A DNA stretch of 64,000 nucleotides from contig NW_027362761.1 in NCBI RefSeq assembly GCF_046119375.1, positions 1,145,512,001 through 1,145,576,000 of the forward strand, given 5' to 3'. This DNA is from Phyllobates terribilis. Lineage: Eukaryota. This document shows positions 4,653 to 53,543 of the stretch, one piece after another. Made by a program: the position numbers and the translations under genes. The notes under the pieces were generated by a model, which was given only the letters and a program-made list of their open reading frames with translations, had not been told where the DNA came from and did no database searches. Position 1 is the first letter of the stretch, and each line of letters opens with the position of its first letter.

Positions 4653-6195
4653 CACTGTGTGCAGAATTATTAGGAAAGTTGTATTTTAGAGGATTATTTT
4701 TATTACTGATCAACAACTATGTTCTCAATCAACCCAAAAGACTCCTAAATATCCAAGCTTAATATTTTTGGAAGTTGGAGTGGGTTTTTTTTAGATTTGG
4801 CTATCTTAGGAGGATATCTGTTTGTGCGGGTAACTATTACTGTGCAGAATTATTAGGCAACTTTAATAAAAACCAAATATAATCCCATCTCACTTGTTTA
4901 TTTTCACCAGGTAAACCAACATCAGTGCACAAAATTTAGAAATAAACATTTCTGACATGCAAAAACAAAAACCCAAAAAATTAGTGATGAATATAGCCAC
5001 CTTTCTTTATGATGACACTCAGCAGCCTTCCATCCATAGATTCTGTCAGTTGCTTGATCTGTTTTCGATCAACATTGCATGCAGCAGCCACCACAGCCTC
5101 CCAGACTCTGTTCCGAGAGGTGTACTGTTTTCCCTCCCTGTAGATCTCACATTTTATGATGGACCACAGGTTCTCTATGGGGTTCAGATCAGGTGAACAA
5201 GGGGGCCATGTCATTATTTTTTCTTCTTTTAGACCTTTACTGGCCAGCCACGCTGTGGAGTAGTTGTATGCATGTGATGGAGCATTGTCCTGCATGAAAA
5301 TCATGTTTTTCTTGAACGATACTGACTTCTTCCTGTACCACTGCTTGAAGAAGTTGTCTTCCAGAAACTGGCAGTAGGTCTGGGAGTTGAGCTTCACTCC
5401 ATCCTCAACCCTAAAAGGGCCCACAAGTTCATCTTTGATGATACCAGCCCATACCAGTACCCCACCTCCACCTTGCTGGCGTCTGAGTCGGAGTGGAGCT
5501 CTCTGCCCTTTACTGATCCAGCCTCTGGCCCATCCATCTGGCCCATCAAGAGTCACTCTCATTTCATCAGTCCATAAAACCTTTGAAAAATCAGTCTTAA
5601 GATAAAACGTCAAGAATGGGCCAAGAAATATCTTATGTTTCTTGTTCAAAGGTGGTCGTTTCTCAGCCTTCCTTACCTTGGCCATGTCCCTGAGTATCGC
5701 ACACCTTGTGCTTTTTGATACTCCAGTAACGTTGCAGCTCTGAAATATGGCAAAACTGGTGGCGAATGGCATCTTGGCAGCTTCACGCTTGATTTTCCTC
5801 AATTCATGGGCAGTTATTTTGCGCCTTTTTTGGCCAACATGCTTCTTGCGACCCTGTTGGCTATTTGCCATGAAATGCTTGAAAAGTTTGGAAATTTCAA
5901 GACTGCTGCATCCCTCTGCAAGACATCTCACAATTTTGGACTTTTCAGAGCCCGTCAAATCTCTCTTCTGACCCATTTTGCCAAAGGAAAGGAAGTTGCC
6001 TAATAATTAAGCACACCTTATATATGGTGTTGATGTCATTAGTCAACACCCCTCCTCATTACAGAGACGCACATCACCAGATTTACTTAATTGGTAGTTG
6101 GCTCTCAAGCCTATGCAGCTTGGAGTAGGACAATATGTATAAAAAGTATCAAAGTGATCAAAATACGCATTTGCCTAATAATTTTGCACACAGTG
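4653..6195 (-). mobile_element. Tc1/mariner DNA transposon, DD37E (TRT-like), 1543 bp
   Basis: TA target duplication at 4651-52 and 6196-97; TIR CACTGTGTGCA(G/A)AATTATTAGG; inner repeats at about 4839-4860 and 5996-6016; transposase ORF 4981-5976. Confidence 0.92.
4981..5976 (-). CDS. Tc1-family transposase, 331 aa, open frame but probably defective
   Basis: Motifs WTDE, QDNAPSH and SPDLNPIEN, with 37 residues between the second D and E. Contains an in-frame 24-bp inversion (5605-5628) and an apparent short deletion in the N-terminal HTH. Confidence 0.85.
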   Translation of the reverse strand: MGQKRDLTGSEKSKIVRCLAEGCSSLEISKLFKHFMANSQQGRKKHVGQKRRKITAHELRKIKREAAKMPFATSFAIFQSCNVTGVSKSTRCAILRDMAKVRKAEKRPPLNKKHKIFLGPFLTFYLKTDFSKVLWTDEMRVTLDGPDGWARGWISKGQRAPLRLRRQQGGGGVLVWAGIIKDELVGPFRVEDGVKLNSQTYCQFLEDNFFKQWYRKKSVSFKKNMIFMQDNAPSHAYNYSTAWLASKGLKEEKIMTWPPCSPDLNPIENLWSIIKCEIYREGKQYTSRNRVWEAVVAAACNVDRKQIKQLTESMDGRLLSVIIKKGGYIHH

Positions 6196-9100: not shown

Positions 9101-10079
9101 GGGGGCTGTTACTTTTTTCTCCTGCATGATGTTGCCCAATCCTAAGCTGGAGACATCATGCAGAAGGGAGGAAAAAAAATGCTTTTTCCCAGAGAATGTC
9201 AAACCCGGCTTTCTCTGGATGATATGGTCTACTACTTACTTACAGCCAAAGCTATTGGACAATTCTCTATACTCCTCCTTCTAGACCTGTCCTCTGCCTT
9301 TGACACAGTTGACCACTGCCTCCGACTACAGATCCTCTCTTCCTTTGGCATCAAAGACCTTGCCCTATCCTGGATCTCCTCATACTTTTCCAACTGTGTC
9401 CCCACTCCCACACTACCTCCTCATCCCGCCCTCTCTCTGTTGGAGTCGCTTAAGGCTCTGTCCTAGGACCCCTACTCTTCTCCAGCTATACCCTTGGCCT
9501 GGGGCAACTCAAAGTCCCATGGCTTCCAGTACCATCTGCACACTGATAACACTCACATCTACCTCTATGGCCCAGACGTCACCTCTCTGCTGTCCAGAAT
9601 CCCAGCATGTCCATCAGCCATAACCACCTTCTCCTCTCGCTTCCTCAAGCTCAATGTGGACAAATCTCAACTCATCATCTTTCCTCCATCTCGCGCATCT
9701 TCCCCATCTGATCTATCACAGTAAACATCACGCTTTCCCTTGTACCAGAAATCCACTGCCTTGGTGTAGCCCCTTGACTCTGCCCTGTCCTTCAAACCGC
9801 ACATCCAAGCTCTCACCACCTCCTGTTGCCTCCAGCTCAAAAATATTTCCAGAATCCGTCCTTTCCTCAATCTACTAAACTGCTTGTGCATGCCCTCATC
9901 ATCTCCCGCCTCGACTACTGCAACATCCTCCTCTGTGGCCTCCCTGCTAACACTTTCGCACCTGTCCAGTCCATCCTTAACGCTGCTGCTGGACTAGTTC
10001 ATCTCTCTCCTCCTCTGCTCCCCCCCTTTACAAATCCTTTCACTGACTCCTAATTACCCAGCCTATCCAGTTCAAACTA

Positions 10080-10485
10080 TGCAAATTGTCTCTTCAGAGA
10101 GGAAGAGAACTAGAACTCTAGCGCCACCTACAGGAAGTAGCAATCCTAAAAGTCAATATTGACCCTTTAACATGACTTAGGATAAAAGCCAAGACCAGAA
10201 ACTCAATTTGCAGACACTGTTTCGGGGTACTGCCCCTCATCAGTGCAAAGTGTGAGATCTGGTTTGGCTGGGTGAAAGGCGTCAGACCGGTATCTAAACA
10301 GTAACGTTTCTTCTTGCGGAGAGCAACATGCTAAGCACGTCAAGGTGAGGAGACTGAGCCACAATGCTCCTCTGAGAAATATGAAAATTGTCTCTTCAGA
10401 GAGGAAGAGGCCTAGAACTCTAGTGCCACCTATTGGAAGTAGCGATCCTAAAAGTCAATACTGACCCTTTAACGAGTTTGAGCCC
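10080..10485 (-). mobile_element. Hammerhead-containing, terminally redundant non-coding retroelement (retrozyme / Penelope pLTR-like), copy 1
   Basis: 302-bp period (10080 repeated at 10382, about 95 bp redundant); probable target duplication gttcaaacta (10070-79) / gtttaaacta (10486-95); no ORF; hammerhead at 10207-10249. Confidence 0.75.
10207..10249 (-). ncRNA. Minimal type I hammerhead ribozyme
   Basis: Minus strand reads UUUGCA-CUGAUGA-GGGG(CAGUA)CCCC-GAA-ACAGUGU-C-UGCAAA. The complete core, 6-bp stem I, 4-bp stem II, palindromic short stem III and GUC cleavage triplet are all present. Confidence 0.88.
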
Positions 10486-12987
10486 GTTTAAACTACTAAA
10501 CACTAACCTACAAAACCATCCATAACCTTTGTCCTCCGTACATCTGTGAACTAATCTCTCCTTCTTTCCTCCACACTTATTGGCTCCTCACCCAATCGCC
10601 TCCAAGATTTCTCCCGAATATCCCCCGTCCTATAGAATTCTGTGCCTCAACACGTCCGATTATCCGCCACATTTGGATCCTTCAGACAGAACCTGAAAAC
10701 CCATCTCTTCAAGAAAGCTTACAACCTGGAATGACCCCGCTGCCACCTCACCACCACCAAAGCTGCTGCAACCCCCCAACCTACTGTCTCCTTCCCCATC
10801 ATGTAGAATGTAAGCCCGCATGGGCAGGGTCCTCTTCCCTCTGTACAAGTCTATCATTGTTAGTTTGTTTACTGTAAGTGATATCTGTATTTTGTAAGAA
10901 ATTCCTGTCTCATGTACAGCACCATGGAATCAATGGTGCTATATACTGTAAATAATAATACGGTAAGACTGATGTTTCTACCCAGGTCACACTGAGATCT
11001 CACTCCCGCCATTTACTGTTATTACTGGTGCAGGGGGTAAGACAGTTGTGCGGCAATAACATTAAATATTCTGCTATGCATCTATTCCAGACACTGGAGA
11101 ATAATGCCCTGCTACTTAGAATAGATGCAGAATAGTGTGTATAACACACTGCAGCTCTCATCTCACAGCACTGACAGTATTGGGGGAGGAGAGCAGTGCT
11201 GTGTGTCATTACATACAGCAAGCTGTATCTATCCCAGAAACACAGCTCTGCTCTCCTCCTGGATCTAGGACTCACAGATAATGCAGAGCGCTGTAATAAC
11301 GCACAGCTCTGCTCTCCTTCCTCACACTATCAGTGCTGTGAGATCAGAGCTGCAGCGCGTCATATACAGTATATCACTCTGGATTTGTGCCAGCTGTTAC
11401 AGCAGTATTCCACGATGCCTGTGATGGATGCATAGTGGTATACGTAATGACACAGTTCTGCTCTCCACCTGGCACTTGAAATCATAATAGTTGCTGGCAG
11501 TAAGATGAGTGAACTGGAGAGGAAAGCAGAGCTGTGTGTCATTGTCTTACTAGATCACTGAGAAAAACCTTTTCTGGGGGCATTTTCTTTTTCTCCCGCA
11601 TGACGTCTCCTGCTCATGATTGGGCACCATTAAACAGGGGGGAAAGTAACCACCCCCATCTCTGCTAATACCTCCTTGGTTATAACAGAAATTAGCTTGT
11701 AAAGGTTAGCATGTAATCTCTTTGCAACCAAGATGAGAAATAAAATTAAAAACTACGTTTTGTTCAGATCTTCAACAATTTTATCACAATGTGGTTAGCA
11801 TGTAAAAACGCAACTATGTGGCTGATAGGAATGACTTTTATTTTTTTTTTCTTTAAAAAAAAAAAAAAGCAGCGCTCTGCAGGCCCTTAAGGAATGAAGA
11901 ATGACTGTCGAGTATGCACACTGCTGCCCAATTCTTGCAGGAATAAAAGCTCAGCGGTACAATGTGGGTCCAAGTGATCAGACCTCCACCGATCAACAAT
12001 TTATTGCCTATCCTGATGGAATCAGTTGCAAAGAAGGCAGTGTCCAGTTATAAGGCAGCCAAATAATGCTTCCAAGGGTGAAAAAAAAAAAAAAAAAGCG
12101 TGAACATAGCCCAAGATATATATAAAAAAAAAAACACAACAACCATAAATACTTAAGAATATCTGTGGATTTGGAGATCCTAATCATATGAGAGAAGTTC
12201 AACCACACAGACAGAAGTCAGTTTCACAGAAACATTTAATGTCATACAAAAATGGAAATAATGTCTTGTGTACAGAGACTGGATTTATGTCAGCTGCCGA
12301 ACAAAACGAGGCCGGTGCGTCCGGAGGACGCGGCTCCACCGAACATCATTAGACCTCTGCGCTCCAGGGACGCCCTTCTAGAAAACACGGCAATATCCCA
12401 AACAATTGTGTAAACATTAATGTACAAAAGTGATACAAAACCAGCACAAGAATGAAAAAGAGAACCACACAAAGACAGCGAGGTACGCCGAGGAAGATCC
12501 AATCTGCCGGTGTCTTGGACTTGTTTTTGGTGGGGGGGTCACGATTACGGCACTTAAAAGCCCGGCATATTTCATGGTCCGTATATGACCAATAAGTCTG
12601 TGGTGACCCGAACTTATAGTCTTTGATGTGTCTCCAAGGCTACAATTTCGGGTCATTGTGGTTCGTATACGTACAATATGGCTCGTGTGAACCCAGCCTA
12701 AGAAGCCATTTCTCCTGACGCTCTCCCTACCGCCTCCAGCATCATGAAATCTCTGGTATCGTACTGGGGTTTTTGTTTGGCGCTTCTGTCGAGTTGCACT
12801 GTAATTTGGCACATCTGGGGGAGGTGGGGGGATCAGCACTGTAAGGGTGTATACAATTGGGTTTTGAATGATGAGATTTGTTCATTGAGGCTCAGGTAGA
12901 AAACATTTGGGGAAACCTTGCCCTACAAGTCAACATAATATGACCTTGCATCTCTGAGCAAAAGTAACCAAATACACCAATGACTTA

Positions 12988-18003: not shown

Positions 18004-18996
18004 TCACGAAGCGTCCCGAGATATCCAGCCGCTCTCGGTCAAAAAGTTTAAAATCCTTTTTTTTAGGACTTTGTCTAAGTAGCTGGGAAGACGGCTCTTT
18101 GATGGGATCCCCTGTCTTTTCTGAAGGTGGTCCTTAATGATGATGGTTTTGACAGTCAGGTAACGGGTTGGGCTCAGATTCAAAGAACTGCACAGAACTT
18201 TCTCCCTGTCCGATAACATCTCGAAACCCTGAAGGTTTTCGATGGCAGCAAATTCTCCCTCTTTGCCGTCTTCCCTTCCTCTCTTGTTGCCTGCAGTGTT
18301 TTTATTCTCTTTCCGCTTTTCCCGCTTGTGGCGGGCGGCTTCGTACTCTGCCGACTCTTCCATCTTGGTGATGCCGTTTCGCCGATACCTCTGTAGTTCT
18401 CGAAGTTTTGCCCTCAGCATTCGCTCTTTGTGCATGTTCTCGAAGAAGTCCTCGATTTCCTTACAGGACATAAACTGATAGAGCGACCTTAGTTTTAACC
18501 GCAATTCCTTCTCTTCTTTCGAGACTTTCCTTTTGGCAGGCTTCTCTTTATCCTTTTTTTCTTTTCCCAAAAATGCTGGTACCAAGTTATAGTCCCGGGC
18601 GATGTTCTTCCTCCTTTGCCGTTCTTTCAGTTTCCGGACATACATATCCACACAAGATTCTTTAAGTTCTACTTCAACGTCGTCATCGTCGTAATTGACA
18701 GACAGGCCGCTGATCAGCGTTTCGGCATCCTGATCGTATTCGATCTCGTAGTCGTCGCGCAGCGGCATGTACCCCAGCTGCTGCTGCTCCTGCACGGTGA
18801 TGTCTAAGGGAGGTAATGGAGTGGTCAGGCTGGGGGACAGGGGACCACCTGTAGGACAGGTGTGGTCCGTTACCCTGTTAGGAATATTGTCCGGTATGCA
18901 GGCCTTGCCGAGGTTCCCATGGATGTACATGCTGACGTAGTGCTCCATCACTTCCTGCGGAGTCCGGTTCGCACCCACATGGGCAGCCATATCCTC
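18004..18996 (-). CDS. TADA2B: Transcriptional adapter 2-beta, exon 2
   Basis: Acceptor AG at 18998-18997; encodes EDMAAHVG...LGYMPLRDDYEIEY...KKRILNFLTESGWISRDAS*. With exon 1 this gives 420 aa (SANT remainder, ADA boxes, SWIRM). Confidence 0.97.
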   Translation of the reverse strand, partial: EDMAAHVGANRTPQEVMEHYVSMYIHGNLGKACIPDNIPNRVTDHTCPTGGPLSPSLTTPLPPLDITVQEQQQLGYMPLRDDYEIEYDQDAETLISGLSVNYDDDDVEVELKESCVDMYVRKLKERQRRKNIARDYNLVPAFLGKEKKDKEKPAKRKVSKEEKELRLKLRSLYQFMSCKEIEDFFENMHKERMLRAKLRELQRYRRNGITKMEESAEYEAARHKREKRKENKNTAGNKRGREDGKEGEFAAIENLQGFEMLSDREKVLCSSLNLSPTRYLTVKTIIIKDHLQKRQGIPSKSRLPSYLDKVLKKRILNFLTESGWISRDAS

Positions 18997-32496: not shown

Positions 32497-32805
32497 NNNN
32501 NNNNNNNNNNNNNNNNNNNNNNNNNNNNNNNNNNNNNNNNNNNNNNNNNNNNNNNNNNNNNNNNNNNNNNNNNNNNNNNNNNNNNNNNNNNNNNNNNNNN
32601 NNNNNNNNNNNNNNNNNNNNNNNNNNNNNNNNNNNNNNNNNNNNNNNNNNNNNNNNNNNNNNNNNNNNNNNNNNNNNNNNNNNNNNNNNNNNNNNNNNNN
32701 NNNNNNNNNNNNNNNNNNNNNNNNNNNNNNNNNNNNNNNNNNNNNNNNNNNNNNNNNNNNNNNNNNNNNNNNNNNNNNNNNNNNNNNNNNNNNNNNNNNN
32801 NNNNN
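32497..32805. other. Assembly gap (309 N)
   Basis: N run. Confidence 1.
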
Positions 32806-33995: not shown

Positions 33996-35885
33996 ATGGA
34001 AGACGTGAGCGGCGGTGACAGACCACCTGCTGGTATTCGTCAGCCTATTATACAGCCGGGCACTGGTCAAGGGGCTGCCAGAGAGCAAGGTACCAGCCAG
34101 GCGGGGGAGAGAGAGCCGGGACCTGGTCAGGAGGGTGCCAAAGAGCCGGGCACTGGTAAAGATGGTGCCAGGGATCCGAAAACCAACCATGAGGGCACCA
34201 CAGAGACAAGTACTACTGAAGAAGGCACCAAAAAGCCAAACACCAGCCTAGAGGGTACCAGAGAGCCGAATACCAGCCTGGAGGGTACCAGAGAGCCGAA
34301 TACCAGCCCGGAGGGTGCCAATAAATCAAACAGCGGACTGGAGGGCCCCAGAGAGCCAAATACAAGCCGGGAGGGTCCCAACGAGTCAAGCAACAGACCA
34401 GAGAGCTCCATATATTCAAGTACCAGCCAAGACGGCACCAGAGACCCGAGTACCAGCCAAGAGGGCCCCAGAGACCCAAGTACCAGCCAAGAGGGCACTA
34501 GAGACCCAAGTACCAGCCAAGAGGGCACTAGAGACCCAAGTACCAGCCAAGAGGGCACTAGAGACCCAAGTACCAGCCAAGAGGTCACCAGAGACCCTGA
34601 AGCTTCTGTCGAGTCAGAGAGTGTCAGAGATCCTAGCACTGGGCACATAACGAGCTATGAGGCAATGGAAGAAGATGGCGAGATTGGCTCATCACAGCAG
34701 CAAGGTGAAGACCCGGAGGGCACCAATGATGACCCGTCACAATTCTGCAACCTAAGTGAAGAGTATGCCTCTGAGATGGATCAGGAACCCAAGGAAGACA
34801 CTCATCCTCATCTAGAAGAACACAAAGAAGATCAGGAGAATGTAGAGCAGAACCAGGACCACGAGCTGCTGGAGATGGTCCATGAGAAGCAAATTGAAGA
34901 AGAACTGATCCAGCAGTACCACGCTATGGTCCAGGAACGTGAAAAGATCCTACAGCACAATGCTCAGCTCCAGCACAAGCTCTACGAGTATTTCCGCAAG
35001 AAGAAAGGAGAAGAGACCCGTCCTGAGACTACATCAAAACGCGCAAGTGATCAGGAGCAACGCTACCTGAAGTATCTGACCAGCCTGGAGGAGATGAGGA
35101 GGAGGCACAAAGAAGAAGCCTCTTTGCATCAGGAGCAGATGGAGGAGCTGAGGGCTCAGTGCCAGGACATTGTGAGCAAGGTGGACAAGGAATGGGCGGC
35201 TTTCCAAGAACAGAAGAAGAAGATTTCCCTGTGTAGCCTGAGTAAGCAAGGAGCTGGTAAGCACGCCGCCTCCTCCCTCATCCAAGAAGTCGACTTATTA
35301 CAGTCCAGGGAAGAACGCAAGGAGAAGGAAGTCATCCAAGTCCGCCTAGAGAACATCAAGCTGAAAAATCACATCAACCGCTACGAATCCACTCTCCGCT
35401 CCAAGGAGGAGTTGGCCGAAAGTCTGCACCTTATTGATTTTGAGCAACTGAAAATAGAAAACCAAACATACAACGAGAAGATCGAGGAAAGGAACGAGGA
35501 GCTGCTGAAACTCAGGAAGAAAATTACCAACACAGTGCAAGTGCTCACTCACGTCAAGGAGAAGCTCCAGTTTGTCCAAGCGGAGAATCAAGAGCAAAAA
35601 GAGAAACTCATGGAGGTGGAGGCTCTAGTGGGCAACAAACGAGACATTTTGACAAAGACTAAACAGGCCAGAGATAGCTTGAGGATGGATAACTTGAAAC
35701 TGAAGGAAAAGTGTGGCCTTCTGGGTAACAAGGTTCTTCTCAGAGACTTTGAGGATAAGGTGGACGCCGCTGAAGAACTCAGACAGACCCTGGAGAATCT
35801 GAAGCGCCGGCATGCAGAGCTAACGCTGTCCAGTAAGGGGTTAGAGAAGAAAATCAATGAGGTCAAACTTGTGATGGACGATTGA
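33996..35885 (+). CDS. CCDC96: Coiled-coil domain-containing 96 / CFAP184, intronless, 629 aa
   Basis: C-terminal DUF4201-type coiled coil (LHLIDFEQLKIENQTYNEKIEERNEELLKLR...THVKEKL); syntenic position head-to-head with TADA2B; AATAAA at 35915-35920. Confidence 0.93.
   Translation: MEDVSGGDRPPAGIRQPIIQPGTGQGAAREQGTSQAGEREPGPGQEGAKEPGTGKDGARDPKTNHEGTTETSTTEEGTKKPNTSLEGTREPNTSLEGTREPNTSPEGANKSNSGLEGPREPNTSREGPNESSNRPESSIYSSTSQDGTRDPSTSQEGPRDPSTSQEGTRDPSTSQEGTRDPSTSQEGTRDPSTSQEVTRDPEASVESESVRDPSTGHITSYEAMEEDGEIGSSQQQGEDPEGTNDDPSQFCNLSEEYASEMDQEPKEDTHPHLEEHKEDQENVEQNQDHELLEMVHEKQIEEELIQQYHAMVQEREKILQHNAQLQHKLYEYFRKKKGEETRPETTSKRASDQEQRYLKYLTSLEEMRRRHKEEASLHQEQMEELRAQCQDIVSKVDKEWAAFQEQKKKISLCSLSKQGAGKHAASSLIQEVDLLQSREERKEKEVIQVRLENIKLKNHINRYESTLRSKEELAESLHLIDFEQLKIENQTYNEKIEERNEELLKLRKKITNTVQVLTHVKEKLQFVQAENQEQKEKLMEVEALVGNKRDILTKTKQARDSLRMDNLKLKEKCGLLGNKVLLRDFEDKVDAAEELRQTLENLKRRHAELTLSSKGLEKKINEVKLVMDD
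34052..34600 (+). repeat. 30-bp coding tandem repeat (10-aa unit, EGTRDPSTSQ-like) in CCDC96
   Basis: About 18 units, diverged at the 5' end and nearly identical at about 34420-34590. Confidence 0.9.
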
Positions 35886-39108: not shown

Positions 39109-39430
39109 TTAATAAGATGTAATTTGCAAAGTTGCTGTCTTTTACAAGTACATTACAATTTTACCCACTATAGAGGGTGAGACGGCTGCTATAAGAATTA
39201 AAATTGGTCAAAACTGCTGATATTGGTCTGATGATTTGAAGAGTAAGGCCACGGCCCCACTATCTGTATTTGGTCAGTATTCGGTCAGTATTTTTTATCA
39301 GGAGTGGGAGCCAAAACCAGGTGAGGAACAATCAGAGAAAAGGTATAATAGAAACAAGTCACCAATTCTGCATTTATCACCCACTCTCCATTAACAGGTG
39401 ATGTTGATGATCACTTTGTTCTTCCCATGG

Positions 39431-39855
39431 GGTCAAGTTTCTCCATGGGGAGAGTGACAGCCAGGCCTGACATGTCATAGTAAGGAGACTTATAAGCCAT
39501 GCATGCTTCTCTGGGAAATTAAATATGCAAATTGCCTCTTCAGACAGGAAGAGGACTAGAACTCTAGCGCCACCTATTGGAAGCTGTGATCCTAAAAGTC
39601 AATATCGACCCTTTAACGAGCCTTGCAATATGACTTTTGATAAAAGCCAAACCAGAATCTCAATTTGCAGACACGGCGTTTCTGGTTGTTGCCCCTCATC
39701 AGTGCAAAGTATGAGATCTGATTTGGTTAGGTGAGAGGCTTAAGACTGGGATTTAAGAGGTAAGGTTTCTTGTGGAGAGTGACATGCCAGGCCTGGAATG
39801 TAGAGTGAGGAGACTTATAAGCTATGCATACTCCTCTTGGAAATTAAATATTTTC
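39431..39855 (-). mobile_element. Hammerhead-containing terminally redundant element, copy 2 (circularly permuted)
   Basis: 325-bp period (39450 repeated at 39775); flanking cccatgg duplication (39424-30 / 39856-62); hammerhead at 39664-39708 with intact core but disrupted stem II. Confidence 0.7.
39664..39708 (-). ncRNA. Degenerate type I hammerhead ribozyme
   Basis: UUUGCA-CUGAUGA-GGGGCAACAACCA-GAA-ACGCCGUGU-C-UGCAAA; the stem II closing G-C pair is lost. Confidence 0.65.
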
Positions 39856-41122
39856 CCCATGGACACATGCACACTCGGCCGAGCCAAATTTTCACGTGTA
39901 TGGGGGAATCGGAAGGAAGAGTCGTCTGACTGTGCGCCTTCGTGTCCACCACATGACCCGGACTGATTTTTAGTCCTGAGGAGCAAACAAAGGATTCTAC
40001 AGAACGACAGCGAGCAGAACTCTTAAAAATAGTAAGGAAGTGAATATTGGAAAACTGAAACTTTACATTATACAAACTGTAATATGGGGAAAATATTTAA
40101 TGGGGATTTATCAGTAAATTCAATTCTCACCTGTGCGCAAGATAAAAGATGTATAATCGAAGGGGTCCGACTGCGGGGGGGTCCGCACAGATCACGTCAA
40201 TTCTGTCAATCATACAGAAAATGGAGTGGTGGTCATGATTGCACCTCACAGCTCCATTCACAGAGGAATCAGGGACCCCCCTGCTCTCGTGATAATTGGG
40301 GGTCTTAGTGGTCGGCCCTCCAGCAATCATACACTTATCACCTCTTATTCTGTGATCAGTTTATTCTCGGAAACAAATAAATTGAGAACCAGGTGTTACC
40401 ATTCCCCTTGTAAATGGGGTAAATCCCTACTCATTGACTAAGCAGTACTCTTCATGTACGGTCGTCAATTCATTCAGGAATAACATACGATTTAATGTGA
40501 AGTTATTGATTAACATGATTTTCTTTTTTATTTAGAAGTGGGGGAGGAAGCAAAGTGGCCATATTTTGTCAAAACTACACCCCCCTCAACAAGTATTGTG
40601 GCTATGTGCCACTCTGAGGGGCCATGGTGTTTGATGACCCCCCACAAGCAGAGTACATTTATACAGGTCGCTGCCAATAATTTATAGTTTTATAAATTCA
40701 TGCGTACAATACATACCTCAGCTGCTACAGAACCTCACTACAAAGAACAGGGCAGATTCCAGTCTACTGTTGATTTATATGACACTTTCTCATCCTTTTC
40801 AACAAGTAGAAGCATAGACCGTGTGTTATGATGTTTTGCAGCAGCTGGGGTTCATGCTGTATGATTTACTGACTGCTGTACACAGTCAGAGGAGACCGCC
40901 GCTCCATTCATCCCCTATGGAGCTGCAGAATGGAATGACAGTCCGGCATCAGACCTGCCAATCCATCCTTCCATTGCCGATTAGAGCAAGTCCCAGCAGT
41001 CGGATCTGCAAGTTATCACCTATCCTTTAAAAAGGACTCGTTACCAGTGCAAAAGTGGCCAGTGTTTGCCCTTATTTTATTCCTGCTGACTGTTCGGTTG
41101 TGTGTATTGTAATATATATATA

Positions 41123-42995
41123 CACTGCTCAAAAAAAATAAAGGGAACACTTAAACAACACAATGTAACTCCAAGTCAATAACACTTCTGTGAAATCTAC
41201 CTGTCCAGTTACGAAGCAACACTGATTGTGAATCCATTTCTCCTGCTGTTGTGCAAATGGAACAGACAACTGGTAGAAATGATTAGCAAGATACCCCCTA
41301 TAAAGGAGCGGTTCTGCAGGTGGTGACCACAGACCATTTCTCTGTTCTCATCCTTTTTGGCTGTTGTTTTGGTCCCTTTTCATTTTGCCTTTGCTCTCAC
41401 CCCTAGAGGTACAGTAGCATGAGGCGGTGTCTACAGTACAACCCACAGAAGTTGCTCAGGTAGTGCAGTTCATCCCGGATGGCACATCAGTGCGAGCTGT
41501 GGCAAGAAGGGTAGCTGTGTCTGTCAGCATATTGTCCAGAGCATGGAGCAGATACCAGGAGATGTGGAGGGAGCCATAGGAGGGGAACAACCCAGCAGCA
41601 GGACCGCTACCTCCGCCTTTGTGAATGGAGCAACAGGAGGAGCACTGCCAGAGCCCTGCAAAATGACCTCCAGCAGGCCACAAATGTGCATGTGTCTGCA
41701 CAAATGGTTAGAAACCGACTCCATGAGGGTGGTATGAGGGCCTGACGTCCACAGATGGGGGTTGTGCTCACAGCCCAACACCGTGCAGGACGCTTGGCAT
41801 TTGCCACAGAACACCAGGATTGGCAAAGTCACCACTGGCGCCCTGTGCTCTTCACAGATGAAAGCAGGTTCACACTGAGCACATGTGACAGACGTGATAG
41901 AGTCTGGACACGCCGTGGAGAGCGATCTGCTGCCTGCAACATCCTTCAGCATGACCGGTTTGGCAGTGGGTCAGTAATGGTGTGGGGTGGCATTTCTTTG
42001 GAGGGCCGCACAGCCCTCCATGTGCTCGCCAGAGGTAGCCTGACTGCCATTAGGTACCGAGATGAGATCCTCAGACCCCTTGTGAGACCATATGCTGGTG
42101 CGGTTGGCCCTGGGTTCCTCCTAATGCAGGACAATGCCAGACCTCATGTGGCTGGAGTGTGTCAGCAGTTCCTGCAAGATGAAGGCATTGAAGCTATGGA
42201 CTGGCCCGCCCGTTCCCCAGACATGAATCCGATTGAGCACATCTGGGACATCATGTCTCGCTCCATCCACCAACGTCACGTTGCACCACAGACTGTCCAG
42301 GAGTTGGCGGATGCTTTAGTTCAGGTCTGGGAGGAGATCCCACAGGAGACCATCTGCAACCTCATCAGGAGCATGGCCAGGCGTTGTAGGGAGGTCATAC
42401 AGGCATGTGGAGGCCACTCACAATACTGAGCCTCATTTTGACTTGTTTTAAGGTCATTAAAAGTGTTGAACGAGTATGTTCTGTCCGCGTATGCTCGGGC
42501 CGAGCTCCGAGTATTTATAGCTGCTCGGTGATATGGTTGAATCGCTCCCGTGTGCATGATTTGCAACTGTTTGGCAGCTTTATTACATGTGAGGAATGTG
42601 TAAGAAATAGACATTCCTCACATGTAATAAAACTGTCAAACAGTCGCAAATCATGCACACGGGAGCGATTCACGCATATCACTGAGCAGCTATAAATACT
42701 CGGAGCTCGGCCTGAGCATACTCGGCGAAAGGGTTAACAGAACATACTCTCTCAACACTAGTCATTACATCAAAGTTGGATCAGCCTGTAGTGTGTTTTT
42801 CCACTTTAATTTTGGGGGTGACTCCAAATCCAGGCCTCCATTGGTTAATAAATTTTATTTCCATTGATTATTTTTGTGTGATTTTGTTGTCAGCGCATTC
42901 AACTTTGTACAGAACAAAGTATTCAATGAGAATATTTCATTCATTCAGATCTAGGATGTGTTATTTGAGTGTTCCCTTTATTTTTTTGAGCAGTG
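41123..42995 (+). mobile_element. Tc1 DD34E transposon, full length but defective
   Basis: TA duplication; TIR CACTGCTCAAAAAAAATAAAGGGAACAC; N-terminus (ATG about 41419) frameshifted; catalytic region 41755-42429 open (TDESRF, QDNARPH-34-E). Confidence 0.9.
42461..42760. mobile_element. hAT-type palindromic MITE nested in the Tc1
   Basis: (T/A)AGTGTTGA...TCAACACTA termini; 8-bp duplication GTCATTAA / GTCATTAC. Confidence 0.8.
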
Positions 42996-47834: not shown

Positions 47835-48003
47835 NNNNNNNNNNNNNNNNNNNNNNNNNNNNNNNNNNNNNNNNNNNNNNNNNNNNNNNNNNNNNNNNNN
47901 NNNNNNNNNNNNNNNNNNNNNNNNNNNNNNNNNNNNNNNNNNNNNNNNNNNNNNNNNNNNNNNNNNNNNNNNNNNNNNNNNNNNNNNNNNNNNNNNNNNN
48001 NNN
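47835..48003. other. Assembly gap (169 N)
   Basis: N run. Confidence 1.
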
Positions 48004-53222: not shown

Positions 53223-53543
53223 NNNNNNNNNNNNNNNNNNNNNNNNNNNNNNNNNNNNNNNNNNNNNNNNNNNNNNNNNNNNNNNNNNNNNNNNNNNNNN
53301 NNNNNNNNNNNNNNNNNNNNNNNNNNNNNNNNNNNNNNNNNNNNNNNNNNNNNNNNNNNNNNNNNNNNNNNNNNNNNNNNNNNNNNNNNNNNNNNNNNNN
53401 NNNNNNNNNNNNNNNNNNNNNNNNNNNNNNNNNNNNNNNNNNNNNNNNNNNNNNNNNNNNNNNNNNNNNNNNNNNNNNNNNNNNNNNNNNNNNNNNNNNN
53501 NNNNNNNNNNNNNNNNNNNNNNNNNNNNNNNNNNNNNNNNNNN
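53223..53543. other. Assembly gap (321 N), probably hiding two TBC1D14 exons
   Basis: N run located between visible TBC1D14 exons. Confidence 0.95.

What the first reader, a model, noticed from the sequence alone, without database searches (positions are those of the whole stretch)
39431..39855. Second hammerhead element is a different circular permutation of the same monomer
Seen: the same blocks as 10080-10485 but with different end points. Copy 1 starts at TGCAAATTG and repeats that block at its end. Copy 2 starts about 90 bp earlier in the monomer and ends just before TGCAAATTG. Both are monomer plus about 90-100 bp of terminal redundancy, with short flanking duplications and one hammerhead each. 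Inference: this is what reverse transcription around a circular RNA, or along a tandem multimer, would leave, and it supports a circRNA intermediate. Stem II here is broken, so this copy is probably inactive.
Basis: partly seen in the sequence, partly recalled or inferred. Interest (0 to 1): 0.7.

Follow-up and report, generated by a model that had tools for sequence, protein, structure and literature searches.

The report
Permuted old frog retrozyme insertion
This is an old, decayed 421-bp copy of a very abundant frog "retrozyme", a small non-coding jumping element carrying a self-cleaving hammerhead RNA; it was pasted in as 1.3 repeat units with different end points from its sister copy, which fits the published model for this known class but cannot show that the template was a circular RNA.

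Summary
Window 39431-39851 is about 80% identical to the element at 10080-10476. Both are one repeat unit (325 and 302 bp) plus about 95 bp of in-phase redundancy. Both have flanking duplications (10/12 and 11/13 bases) and one hammerhead each, on the minus strand. Their end points on the repeat unit differ, so they are circular permutations of each other. In copy 2 two of the four stem II pairs are lost, including the conserved G10.1-C11.1 pair. Most family members in DNA runs keep them.

The layout shows that a template longer than one unit was copied and that priming was not at the ribozyme cut site. A linear multimeric transcript copied in the Penelope-like way explains this as well as a circular RNA does. 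Copy 1's first base and copy 2's last base fall on the same position of the repeat unit, inside an ATGCAAAT octamer. This hints that the ends are not random.

Non-LTR retrozymes of amphibians and production of tandem cDNA from such RNAs are already published. This scan has noted the family many times elsewhere in this frog genome, including another "circular permutation" pair. The locus is an ordinary, probably inactive member of a known kind.

The parts
39431..39851 (-). Copy 2: 421-bp retrozyme insertion of 1.3 units (RNA sense is the minus strand)
   Evidence: The right junction lies within zero-mismatch contigs of two DNA runs (39721-40150 in X1, 39772-40150 in X2).
39527..39851 (-). Copy 2, full 325-bp unit
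   Evidence: nhmmer E 9.7e-119; period 325-326.
39431..39526 (-). Copy 2, partial unit, redundant with 39756-39851
   Evidence: 81/92 identical plus 8 gap columns; nhmmer E 1.7e-15.
39648..39725 (-). Copy 2 type I hammerhead (long helix I, core 39679-39702). The cut would fall between 39670 and 39669. Helix II is broken (11.1 and 11.4 are A).
   Evidence: Family majority letters at 39683, 39686 and 39692 restore the pairs (table 3).
39419..39430 (.). Left copy of the candidate target-site duplication of copy 2 (TTCTTCCCATGG)
39851..39862 (.). Right copy of the candidate target-site duplication of copy 2 (TTTTCCCCATGG). Its first T may belong to the element.
39525..39532 (+). Octamer ATGCAAAT at the unit junction. 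Copy 2's last base and copy 1's first base both map to its T at 39526.
   Evidence: The bin containing it, 39524-39557, is the best conserved of the family (table 2).
10080..10476 (-). Copy 1: 397-bp insertion of 1.3 units (unit 302 bp, shortened by deletions)
10194..10263 (-). Copy 1 type I hammerhead (core 10220-10243). The cut would fall between 10213 and 10212. Helix II is intact and helix III has only 2 bp.
10067..10079 (.). Left copy of the candidate target-site duplication of copy 1
   Evidence: 11/13, p about 0.011
10483..10495 (.). Right copy of the candidate target-site duplication of copy 1, preceded by a 6-nt filler at 10477-10482

Best explanation
Window 39431-39851 is an old, dead insertion of a very abundant frog non-LTR retrozyme. 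This is a roughly 325-332-bp non-coding unit with a type I, weak-helix-III hammerhead, of the newt satellite-2 and axolotl kind.

Shown:
- It is 1.3 units long and flanked by a roughly 12-bp duplication.
- It is permuted relative to the sister copy at 10080-10476.
- Its ribozyme has lost two helix II pairs.

Inferred:
- It was made by target-primed reverse transcription, most likely by a Penelope-like element's enzyme.
- The template was an RNA longer than one unit. Either a linear multimeric transcript of a tandem array or a circular monomer read more than once would do.
- Priming was inside the unit and not at the ribozyme cut site.

The DNA does not say which template was used. With one ribozyme and a broken helix II, this locus cannot itself release or circularise a unit-length RNA.
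For: - Two elements only, 78-80% identical, with overlapping permuted blocks.
- In-phase redundancy of about 95 nt in each.
- Flanking duplications 11/13 and 10/12, p about 0.011 and 0.039 against random placements.
- Hammerhead core on the minus strand with a long helix I. Helix II folds in copy 1 only.
- The family is very abundant: summed contig depth is 0.3-1.0 million over 39490-39727 against 12-20 in the unique flank, in two DNA runs from different studies.
- Family majority letters restore helix II (table 3).
- GC is 43.5-45%. There is no ORF over 69 aa inside the element and no LTR.
- These features match the published class description (PMC7229834; bioRxiv 10.64898/2026.07.22.740005).
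- Partial tandems are the Penelope-like insertion signature (PMC8557442, PMC11167929).
Against: - Rfam's hammerhead models do not reach threshold.
- The flanking duplications are short and imperfect, and no empty site was available to fix the boundaries.
- No Penelope-like reverse transcriptase lies in the window, and similarity to a Penelope pLTR was not tested.
- Expression evidence is indirect: all runs were contigs.
- Only two copies could be examined. The metagenome scan gave no further copies.
Confidence: 0.78

Rival explanations
1. One reading: the template was a circular monomeric RNA, primed at an arbitrary point and read about 1.3 times (rolling-circle reverse transcription).
For: - More than one unit with in-phase redundancy and different end points in the two copies.
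- The RNA-sense 3' ends are not at the ribozyme cut site.
- There is 4-5 nt of microhomology between target and element at copy 1's priming junction (AACTA against AAATA).
- The redundant parts differ by 10-12%, no more than the flanking duplications do, which is compatible with identity at insertion.
- circRNA as a template for tandem cDNA is the published hypothesis for the class (PMC7229834, Discussion).
Against: - Every one of these features is also produced by a linear multimer.
- Copy 1's first base and copy 2's last base coincide on the unit (chance about 2-8%), which random priming on a circle does not predict.
- No read-level evidence of circles could be obtained, since only contigs were available.
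Confidence: 0.35
2. Penelope-type copying of a linear multimeric transcript: reverse transcription starts at a preferred internal site and runs into the upstream unit, leaving a partial tandem (pLTR-like) insert. No circle is needed.
For: - Copy 1 is exactly [5'-truncated unit][full unit] in RNA sense.
- Its 3' end lies at the unit junction, 133 nt downstream of the ribozyme cut and 8-10 nt past a conserved hairpin.
- A purified Penelope-like enzyme starts internally next to a stem-loop about 85-90 nt past the ribozyme cut, and ribozyme cleavage is dispensable (PMC11167929).
- Partial tandems are typical of Penelope-like elements and their non-autonomous derivatives (PMC8557442).
- Vertebrate retrozymes group with Penelope pLTRs (bioRxiv 10.64898/2026.07.22.740005).
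- Multimeric RNAs exist in axolotl (PMC7229834).
Against: - Copy 2's RNA-sense 3' end is 96 nt past that junction, so the two copies do not share a 3' terminus.
- In copy 2 it is the 5' end that sits at the junction.
- No 30-40-bp 'tail' is evident.
- Among the listed loose ends in the DNA runs none sits at 39526/39527 (table 7; the list is truncated).
Confidence: 0.4
3. Both elements are remnants of longer tandem arrays trimmed by deletions, and the flanking duplications are chance matches.
For: The duplications are short and imperfect. The family also occurs as arrays elsewhere in this genome according to earlier notes of this scan (unchecked).
Against: Both elements have a boundary-abutting repeat. 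The joint chance is about 4e-4. Homology stops sharply at both ends of both copies.
Confidence: 0.08
4. A single-unit insertion followed by a later local duplication produced the redundancy.
For: An earlier follow-up in this scan reached that reading for a 2.1-unit copy elsewhere (s1-211431; not checked here).
Against: - The redundant part sits at the far end of the unit, in phase and inside the flanking duplication (A-B-C-A). A simple tandem duplication would not produce this layout.
- The layout occurs in both copies independently.
- The redundant parts are as diverged (10-12%) as the flanking duplications.
Confidence: 0.04

Closest known systems
Metazoan non-LTR retrozymes (axolotl Rtz_331/Rtz_353; newt satellite 2), Cervera and de la Pena 2020, PMC7229834
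   Same: - A non-coding unit of about 300-330 bp and GC below 50%.
- One type I hammerhead per unit with a long helix I and a very weak helix III.
- Multi-unit copies, and flanking duplications longer than 4 bp.
- Very high copy number.
   Different: - This is a frog (anuran) family.
- This locus holds only 1.3 units with a single, damaged ribozyme.
- Circular RNA from this family was not shown here.
Penelope-like elements and their pLTR / partial-tandem insertions (PMC8557442, PMC11167929; retrozyme-pLTR link in bioRxiv 10.64898/2026.07.22.740005)
   Same: - A partial tandem layout with a 5'-truncated unit in front of a full unit (copy 1).
- A hammerhead in the repeated part.
- An insertion end some 130-140 nt downstream of the ribozyme cut, next to a hairpin.
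   Different: - There is no reverse transcriptase or GIY-YIG ORF.
- No 30-40-bp tail was recognised.
- Copy 2 does not share copy 1's 3' terminus.
- Sequence similarity to a frog Penelope pLTR was not tested.
Plant LTR retrozymes (PMC4918200)
   Same: A non-autonomous retroelement with hammerheads, thought to move through circular RNA.
   Different: Plant elements have type III ribozymes in true LTRs, PBS and PPT motifs and 4-bp duplications, and are 600-1000 nt long. None of these features is present here.

Membership tests
Hammerhead ribozyme, type I | Conserved core CUGAUGA ... GAAA with a GUC (NUH) cut site | tested here: met
   Both copies, minus strand: core 39702-39679 and 10243-10220, followed by GUC.
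Hammerhead ribozyme, type I | Helix II closed by the G10.1-C11.1 pair | tested here: not met
   Copy 2 has A at 11.1 and at 11.4 (39683 and 39686 are T on the plus strand), and helix II does not fold. Copy 1 and the family majority meet this feature (table 3).
Hammerhead ribozyme, type I | Open-ended helix I formed by the sequences 5' of the core and 3' of the cut site; helix III closed by a loop | tested here: met
   A long interrupted helix I is predicted in both copies, z -2.7 and -3.3. Helix III has 2-3 bp with a triloop (read from the sequence).
Hammerhead ribozyme, type I | Score at or above Rfam's gathering threshold | tested here: not met
   No match at gathering. Copy 1 scores 15.6 bits against 48.5 for RF00008. 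Copy 2 has no hammerhead match up to E 10.
Hammerhead ribozyme, type I | Self-cleavage | not testable with these tools
   Needs in vitro transcription of monomeric and dimeric constructs.
Metazoan non-LTR retrozyme | Non-coding unit of 150-450 bp with one type I hammerhead, low GC, and no LTR, PBS or PPT | tested here: met
   Units of 302 and 325 bp, GC 0.435-0.451, longest internal ORF 69 aa.
Metazoan non-LTR retrozyme | Head-to-tail multi-unit organisation | tested here: inconclusive
   Only 1.3 units are present at each locus. Arrays elsewhere in the genome are reported only by unchecked notes of this scan.
Metazoan non-LTR retrozyme | Target-site duplications longer than 4 bp where present | tested here: met
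   11/13 and 10/12, p about 0.011 and 0.039.
Metazoan non-LTR retrozyme | Expressed as linear and circular unit-length RNA | tested here: inconclusive
   All runs were contigs. One run guessed to be RNA (X9) over-represents a few family variants relative to DNA, as transcripts would. Circles cannot be seen in contigs.
Penelope-like-element-derived non-autonomous element | Sequence similarity to the pLTR of an autonomous Penelope-like element of the same genome | not tested
   No Penelope-like ORF lies in the window, and no access to the rest of the genome or to Repbase.
Penelope-like-element-derived non-autonomous element | Partial tandem (pLTR-like) insertion with a fixed 3' terminus, with or without a 30-40-bp tail | tested here: inconclusive
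   The partial tandem layout is present in both copies. The 3' termini differ by 96 nt, and one boundary is shared in opposite roles.

The most novel reading that the evidence does not exclude
The unit junction inside the octamer, just past a conserved hairpin, is a preferred site where retrozyme cDNA both starts and ends. It is copy 1's RNA-sense 3' end and copy 2's RNA-sense 5' end. If so, frog retrozymes are copied from linear multimers by Penelope-type internal initiation at a defined RNA signal, and circular RNA is a by-product and not the transposition intermediate.
Probability: 0.2. Interest if true: 0.5.

Novelty: new member of a known kind. Interest (0 to 1): 0.25.

Why it matters
How animal retrozymes move is still a hypothesis: circRNA-templated tandem cDNA, with Penelope-like elements as helpers. 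Permuted, duplication-flanked inserts longer than one unit are the genomic footprint that model predicts. A genome-wide map of their end points could separate random priming on circles from site-specific initiation on multimers. This one locus adds an illustration and a small hint (a shared boundary), not a test. It is an old, inactive copy of an abundant family in a class that is already described.

Tried and rejected
- Rfam at gathering threshold on the whole window found nothing. Permissive scans gave only a sub-threshold Hammerhead_3 match for copy 1 and chance matches for copy 2.
- A search for paralogous empty sites of the flanks within the window found none. The boundaries therefore rest on homology between the copies plus the flanking duplications.
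- nhmmer with a unit profile and a core-motif scan found no further copies or fragments in the window.
- Read laying was meant to give the distribution of end points across genomic copies. All runs were Logan contigs and the loose-end table is truncated (1845 rows not shown), so the distribution could not be obtained. The 'goes back' joints listed (for example 39789 to 39503) are alternative placements in the duplicated part, not back-junctions.
- The CCATGGGG inside the first partial unit resembles the target CCCATGG. Aligned to copy 1 it is the same length with 3 substitutions, so it is ordinary divergence and not a priming footprint.
- Later local duplication and trimmed-array readings were considered and given low weight (see rivals).

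Full report
**What is there**

The window holds exactly two related elements (blastn; nhmmer with a unit profile).
- Copy 1 is 10080-10476 (397 bp).
- Copy 2, the finding, is 39431-39851 (421 bp).
- They match in two overlapping blocks: 10075-10331 with 39521-39787 at 80%, and 10306-10476 with 39437-39620 at 78%. Two circular permutations of one repeat unit give exactly this pattern.

Each copy is one unit plus an in-phase partial unit.
- Copy 1 has a period of 302 bp. Positions 10080-10174 repeat at 10382-10476 with 85/95 identical.
- Copy 2 has a period of 325-326 bp. Positions 39431-39526 repeat at 39756-39851 with 81/92 identical plus 8 gap columns.
- Copy 1 begins at TGCAAATTG. Copy 2 begins 96 nt earlier on the unit and ends at ...AAATAT, immediately before that block.

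The element ends at 39851, not 39855.

**Flanks**

- Copy 1 is bracketed by 10067-10079 and 10483-10495 (11/13 identical), with a 6-nt filler at 10477-10482.
- Copy 2 is bracketed by 39419-39430 and 39851-39862 (10/12 identical, CCCATGG exact).
- Scored against 20,000 random placements in the same window, these matches have p about 0.011 and 0.039.
- No paralogous empty site exists in the window.
- The right junction of copy 2 lies within zero-mismatch contigs of two DNA runs from different studies (table 8). One of those runs may be the assembly's own sample.

**The ribozyme**

The hammerhead core lies on the minus strand in both copies.

Both copies have a long interrupted helix I (for example UUUGCA pairing with UGCAAA) and a GUC cut site.
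- Copy 1 would be cut between 10213 and 10212.
- Copy 2 would be cut between 39670 and 39669.

Helix II:
- RNAfold forms helix I and helix II (GGGG/CCCC) in copy 1.
- In copy 2 only helix I forms, because its 3' strand reads ACCA.
- Contigs of other family members in two DNA runs carry G at 39683 in about 75% of depth. At 39686 they carry C or G, and at 39692 G or C, in roughly matching proportions (table 3).
- The family majority therefore keeps a 4-bp helix II. The figures are compatible with a G-C to C-G swap at 10.4/11.4, but linkage of the two positions was not shown.

Helix III has only 2-3 bp, as in the amphibian ribozymes that cleave well only as dimers (PMC7229834).

Rfam does not call either motif. 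'Stem II broken, probably inactive' is supported. Each copy also has a single ribozyme, so neither locus could release a unit-length RNA.

**The family**

Earlier notes of this scan place the window in a poison-frog genome and report this 325-332-bp unit many times. I treat those notes as leads only.

Independent evidence comes from laying contigs of two DNA runs on 39150-40150 at 80% likeness.
- Summed contig depth is 0.3-1.0 million over 39490-39727, against 12-20 in the unique flank (table 2). The tool warns that this is not a copy number, but the family is plainly very abundant.
- The best-conserved part runs from the ribozyme to just past the octamer junction. The segment upstream of the ribozyme (39728-39851) is much less conserved.

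Evidence on expression is indirect.
- Run X9, RNA by guess only, over-represents variants that are rare in DNA. Examples are 39515 G>A at 55% against 2%, 39495 A>C at 88% against 5%, and an inserted C after 39801 at 98% against 7%. Transcripts of a few loci would give this pattern.
- Run X7 mirrors the DNA.
- Contigs cannot show RNA ends or circles, so expression is suggestive only.

**How it most likely arose**

- The elements have GC of 43.5-45%. The longest ORF inside copy 2 is 69 aa, and there are no LTRs.
- Together with the ribozyme, unit size and flanking duplications, they fit the published description of metazoan non-LTR retrozymes (PMC7229834). A 2026 preprint links vertebrate retrozymes phylogenetically to Penelope pLTRs (10.64898/2026.07.22.740005).
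- A duplication-flanked insert of 1.3 in-phase units means the copied template exceeded one unit.
- The RNA-sense 3' ends (10080 and 39431) lie 133 nt and about 238 nt downstream of the cut site. A self-cleaved linear monomer was therefore not the template.
- An A-B-C-A layout inside the flanking duplications, found twice independently, is not what a later simple tandem duplication gives.

**Circle or multimer**

The data stop here. Three published results keep the linear multimer equally open.
- The same paper shows linear multimers alongside circles in axolotl.
- Penelope-like elements and their non-autonomous derivatives typically insert as partial tandems (PMC8557442).
- A purified Penelope-like enzyme starts reverse transcription at an internal site next to a stem-loop, on multi-copy RNA, with ribozyme cleavage dispensable (PMC11167929).

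In RNA sense, copy 1 is exactly a 5'-truncated unit followed by a full unit. It ends 8-10 nt past a conserved hairpin, which fits the Penelope-type picture. Copy 2 does not share that 3' end. Its 5' end, however, falls on the same unit position, the T inside ATGCAAAT at 39526 (10080 in copy 1). I put the chance of such a coincidence at about 2-8%. It is a hint that ends are not random, but two copies cannot settle it.

The redundant parts differ by 10-12% and the flanking duplications by about 15%. Both readings are compatible with these numbers, which also mark both insertions as old.

**Verdict**

A template longer than one unit is supported; a circular RNA specifically is not shown.
- The class and its proposed mechanism are published, and the family has been noted repeatedly by this scan, including another 'circular permutation' pair (s1-224828).
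- This copy is a decayed, inactive member.
- Collecting genomic copies to map end points, the decisive test, could not be done with the tools at hand: one reads call returned contigs only with truncated tables, and the metagenome scan was unproductive.
- N runs in the window (32497-32805, 47835-48003, 53223-53543) were left untouched.

Noticed in passing
window 39244-39386: A very abundant short repeat lies 44 bp left of copy 2. Summed contig depth is about 2.5 million in both DNA runs. Loose ends with random flanks sit at 39244/39246, and fold-back ('opposite strands') joints link about 39320 with 39386. It looks like a MITE or fold-back element. Only a weak 19-nt inverted repeat is present in this copy.
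   Followed up: partly
window 10080 and 39851 (unit junction; octamer 39525-39532 and 10079-10086): Copy 1's first base and copy 2's last base map to the same unit position inside an ATGCAAAT octamer, 8-10 nt past a conserved hairpin (CUCUUC...GAAGAG in RNA sense). This may mark a preferred start or stop site for cDNA. The chance of coincidence is about 2-8%.
   Followed up: partly
window 39490-39840, run X9: In a run guessed to be RNA, a few family variants that are rare in DNA dominate the depth. One contig (depth 272.7) replaces 39682-39801, including the ribozyme core, with 23 other letters. This suggests that a subset of family members is transcribed, including a ribozyme-less derivative.
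   Followed up: no
window 33996-35885 (+) and 18004-18990 (-): An intact 629-aa ORF carries a CCDC113/CCDC96 coiled-coil domain (E 2e-44). A 328-aa ORF carries TADA2A-like and Ada2b C-terminal domains (likely the last exon of a TADA2B-like gene). Copy 2 lies about 3.5 kb downstream of the CCDC96-like ORF.
   Followed up: no
window 4981-5976 (-) and 41755-42429 (+): Two ORFs with DDE_3 transposase domains, i.e. Tc1/mariner-type remnants.
   Followed up: no
No second copy of that repeat is in the window, so no empty site could be reconstructed.
   Followed up: partly
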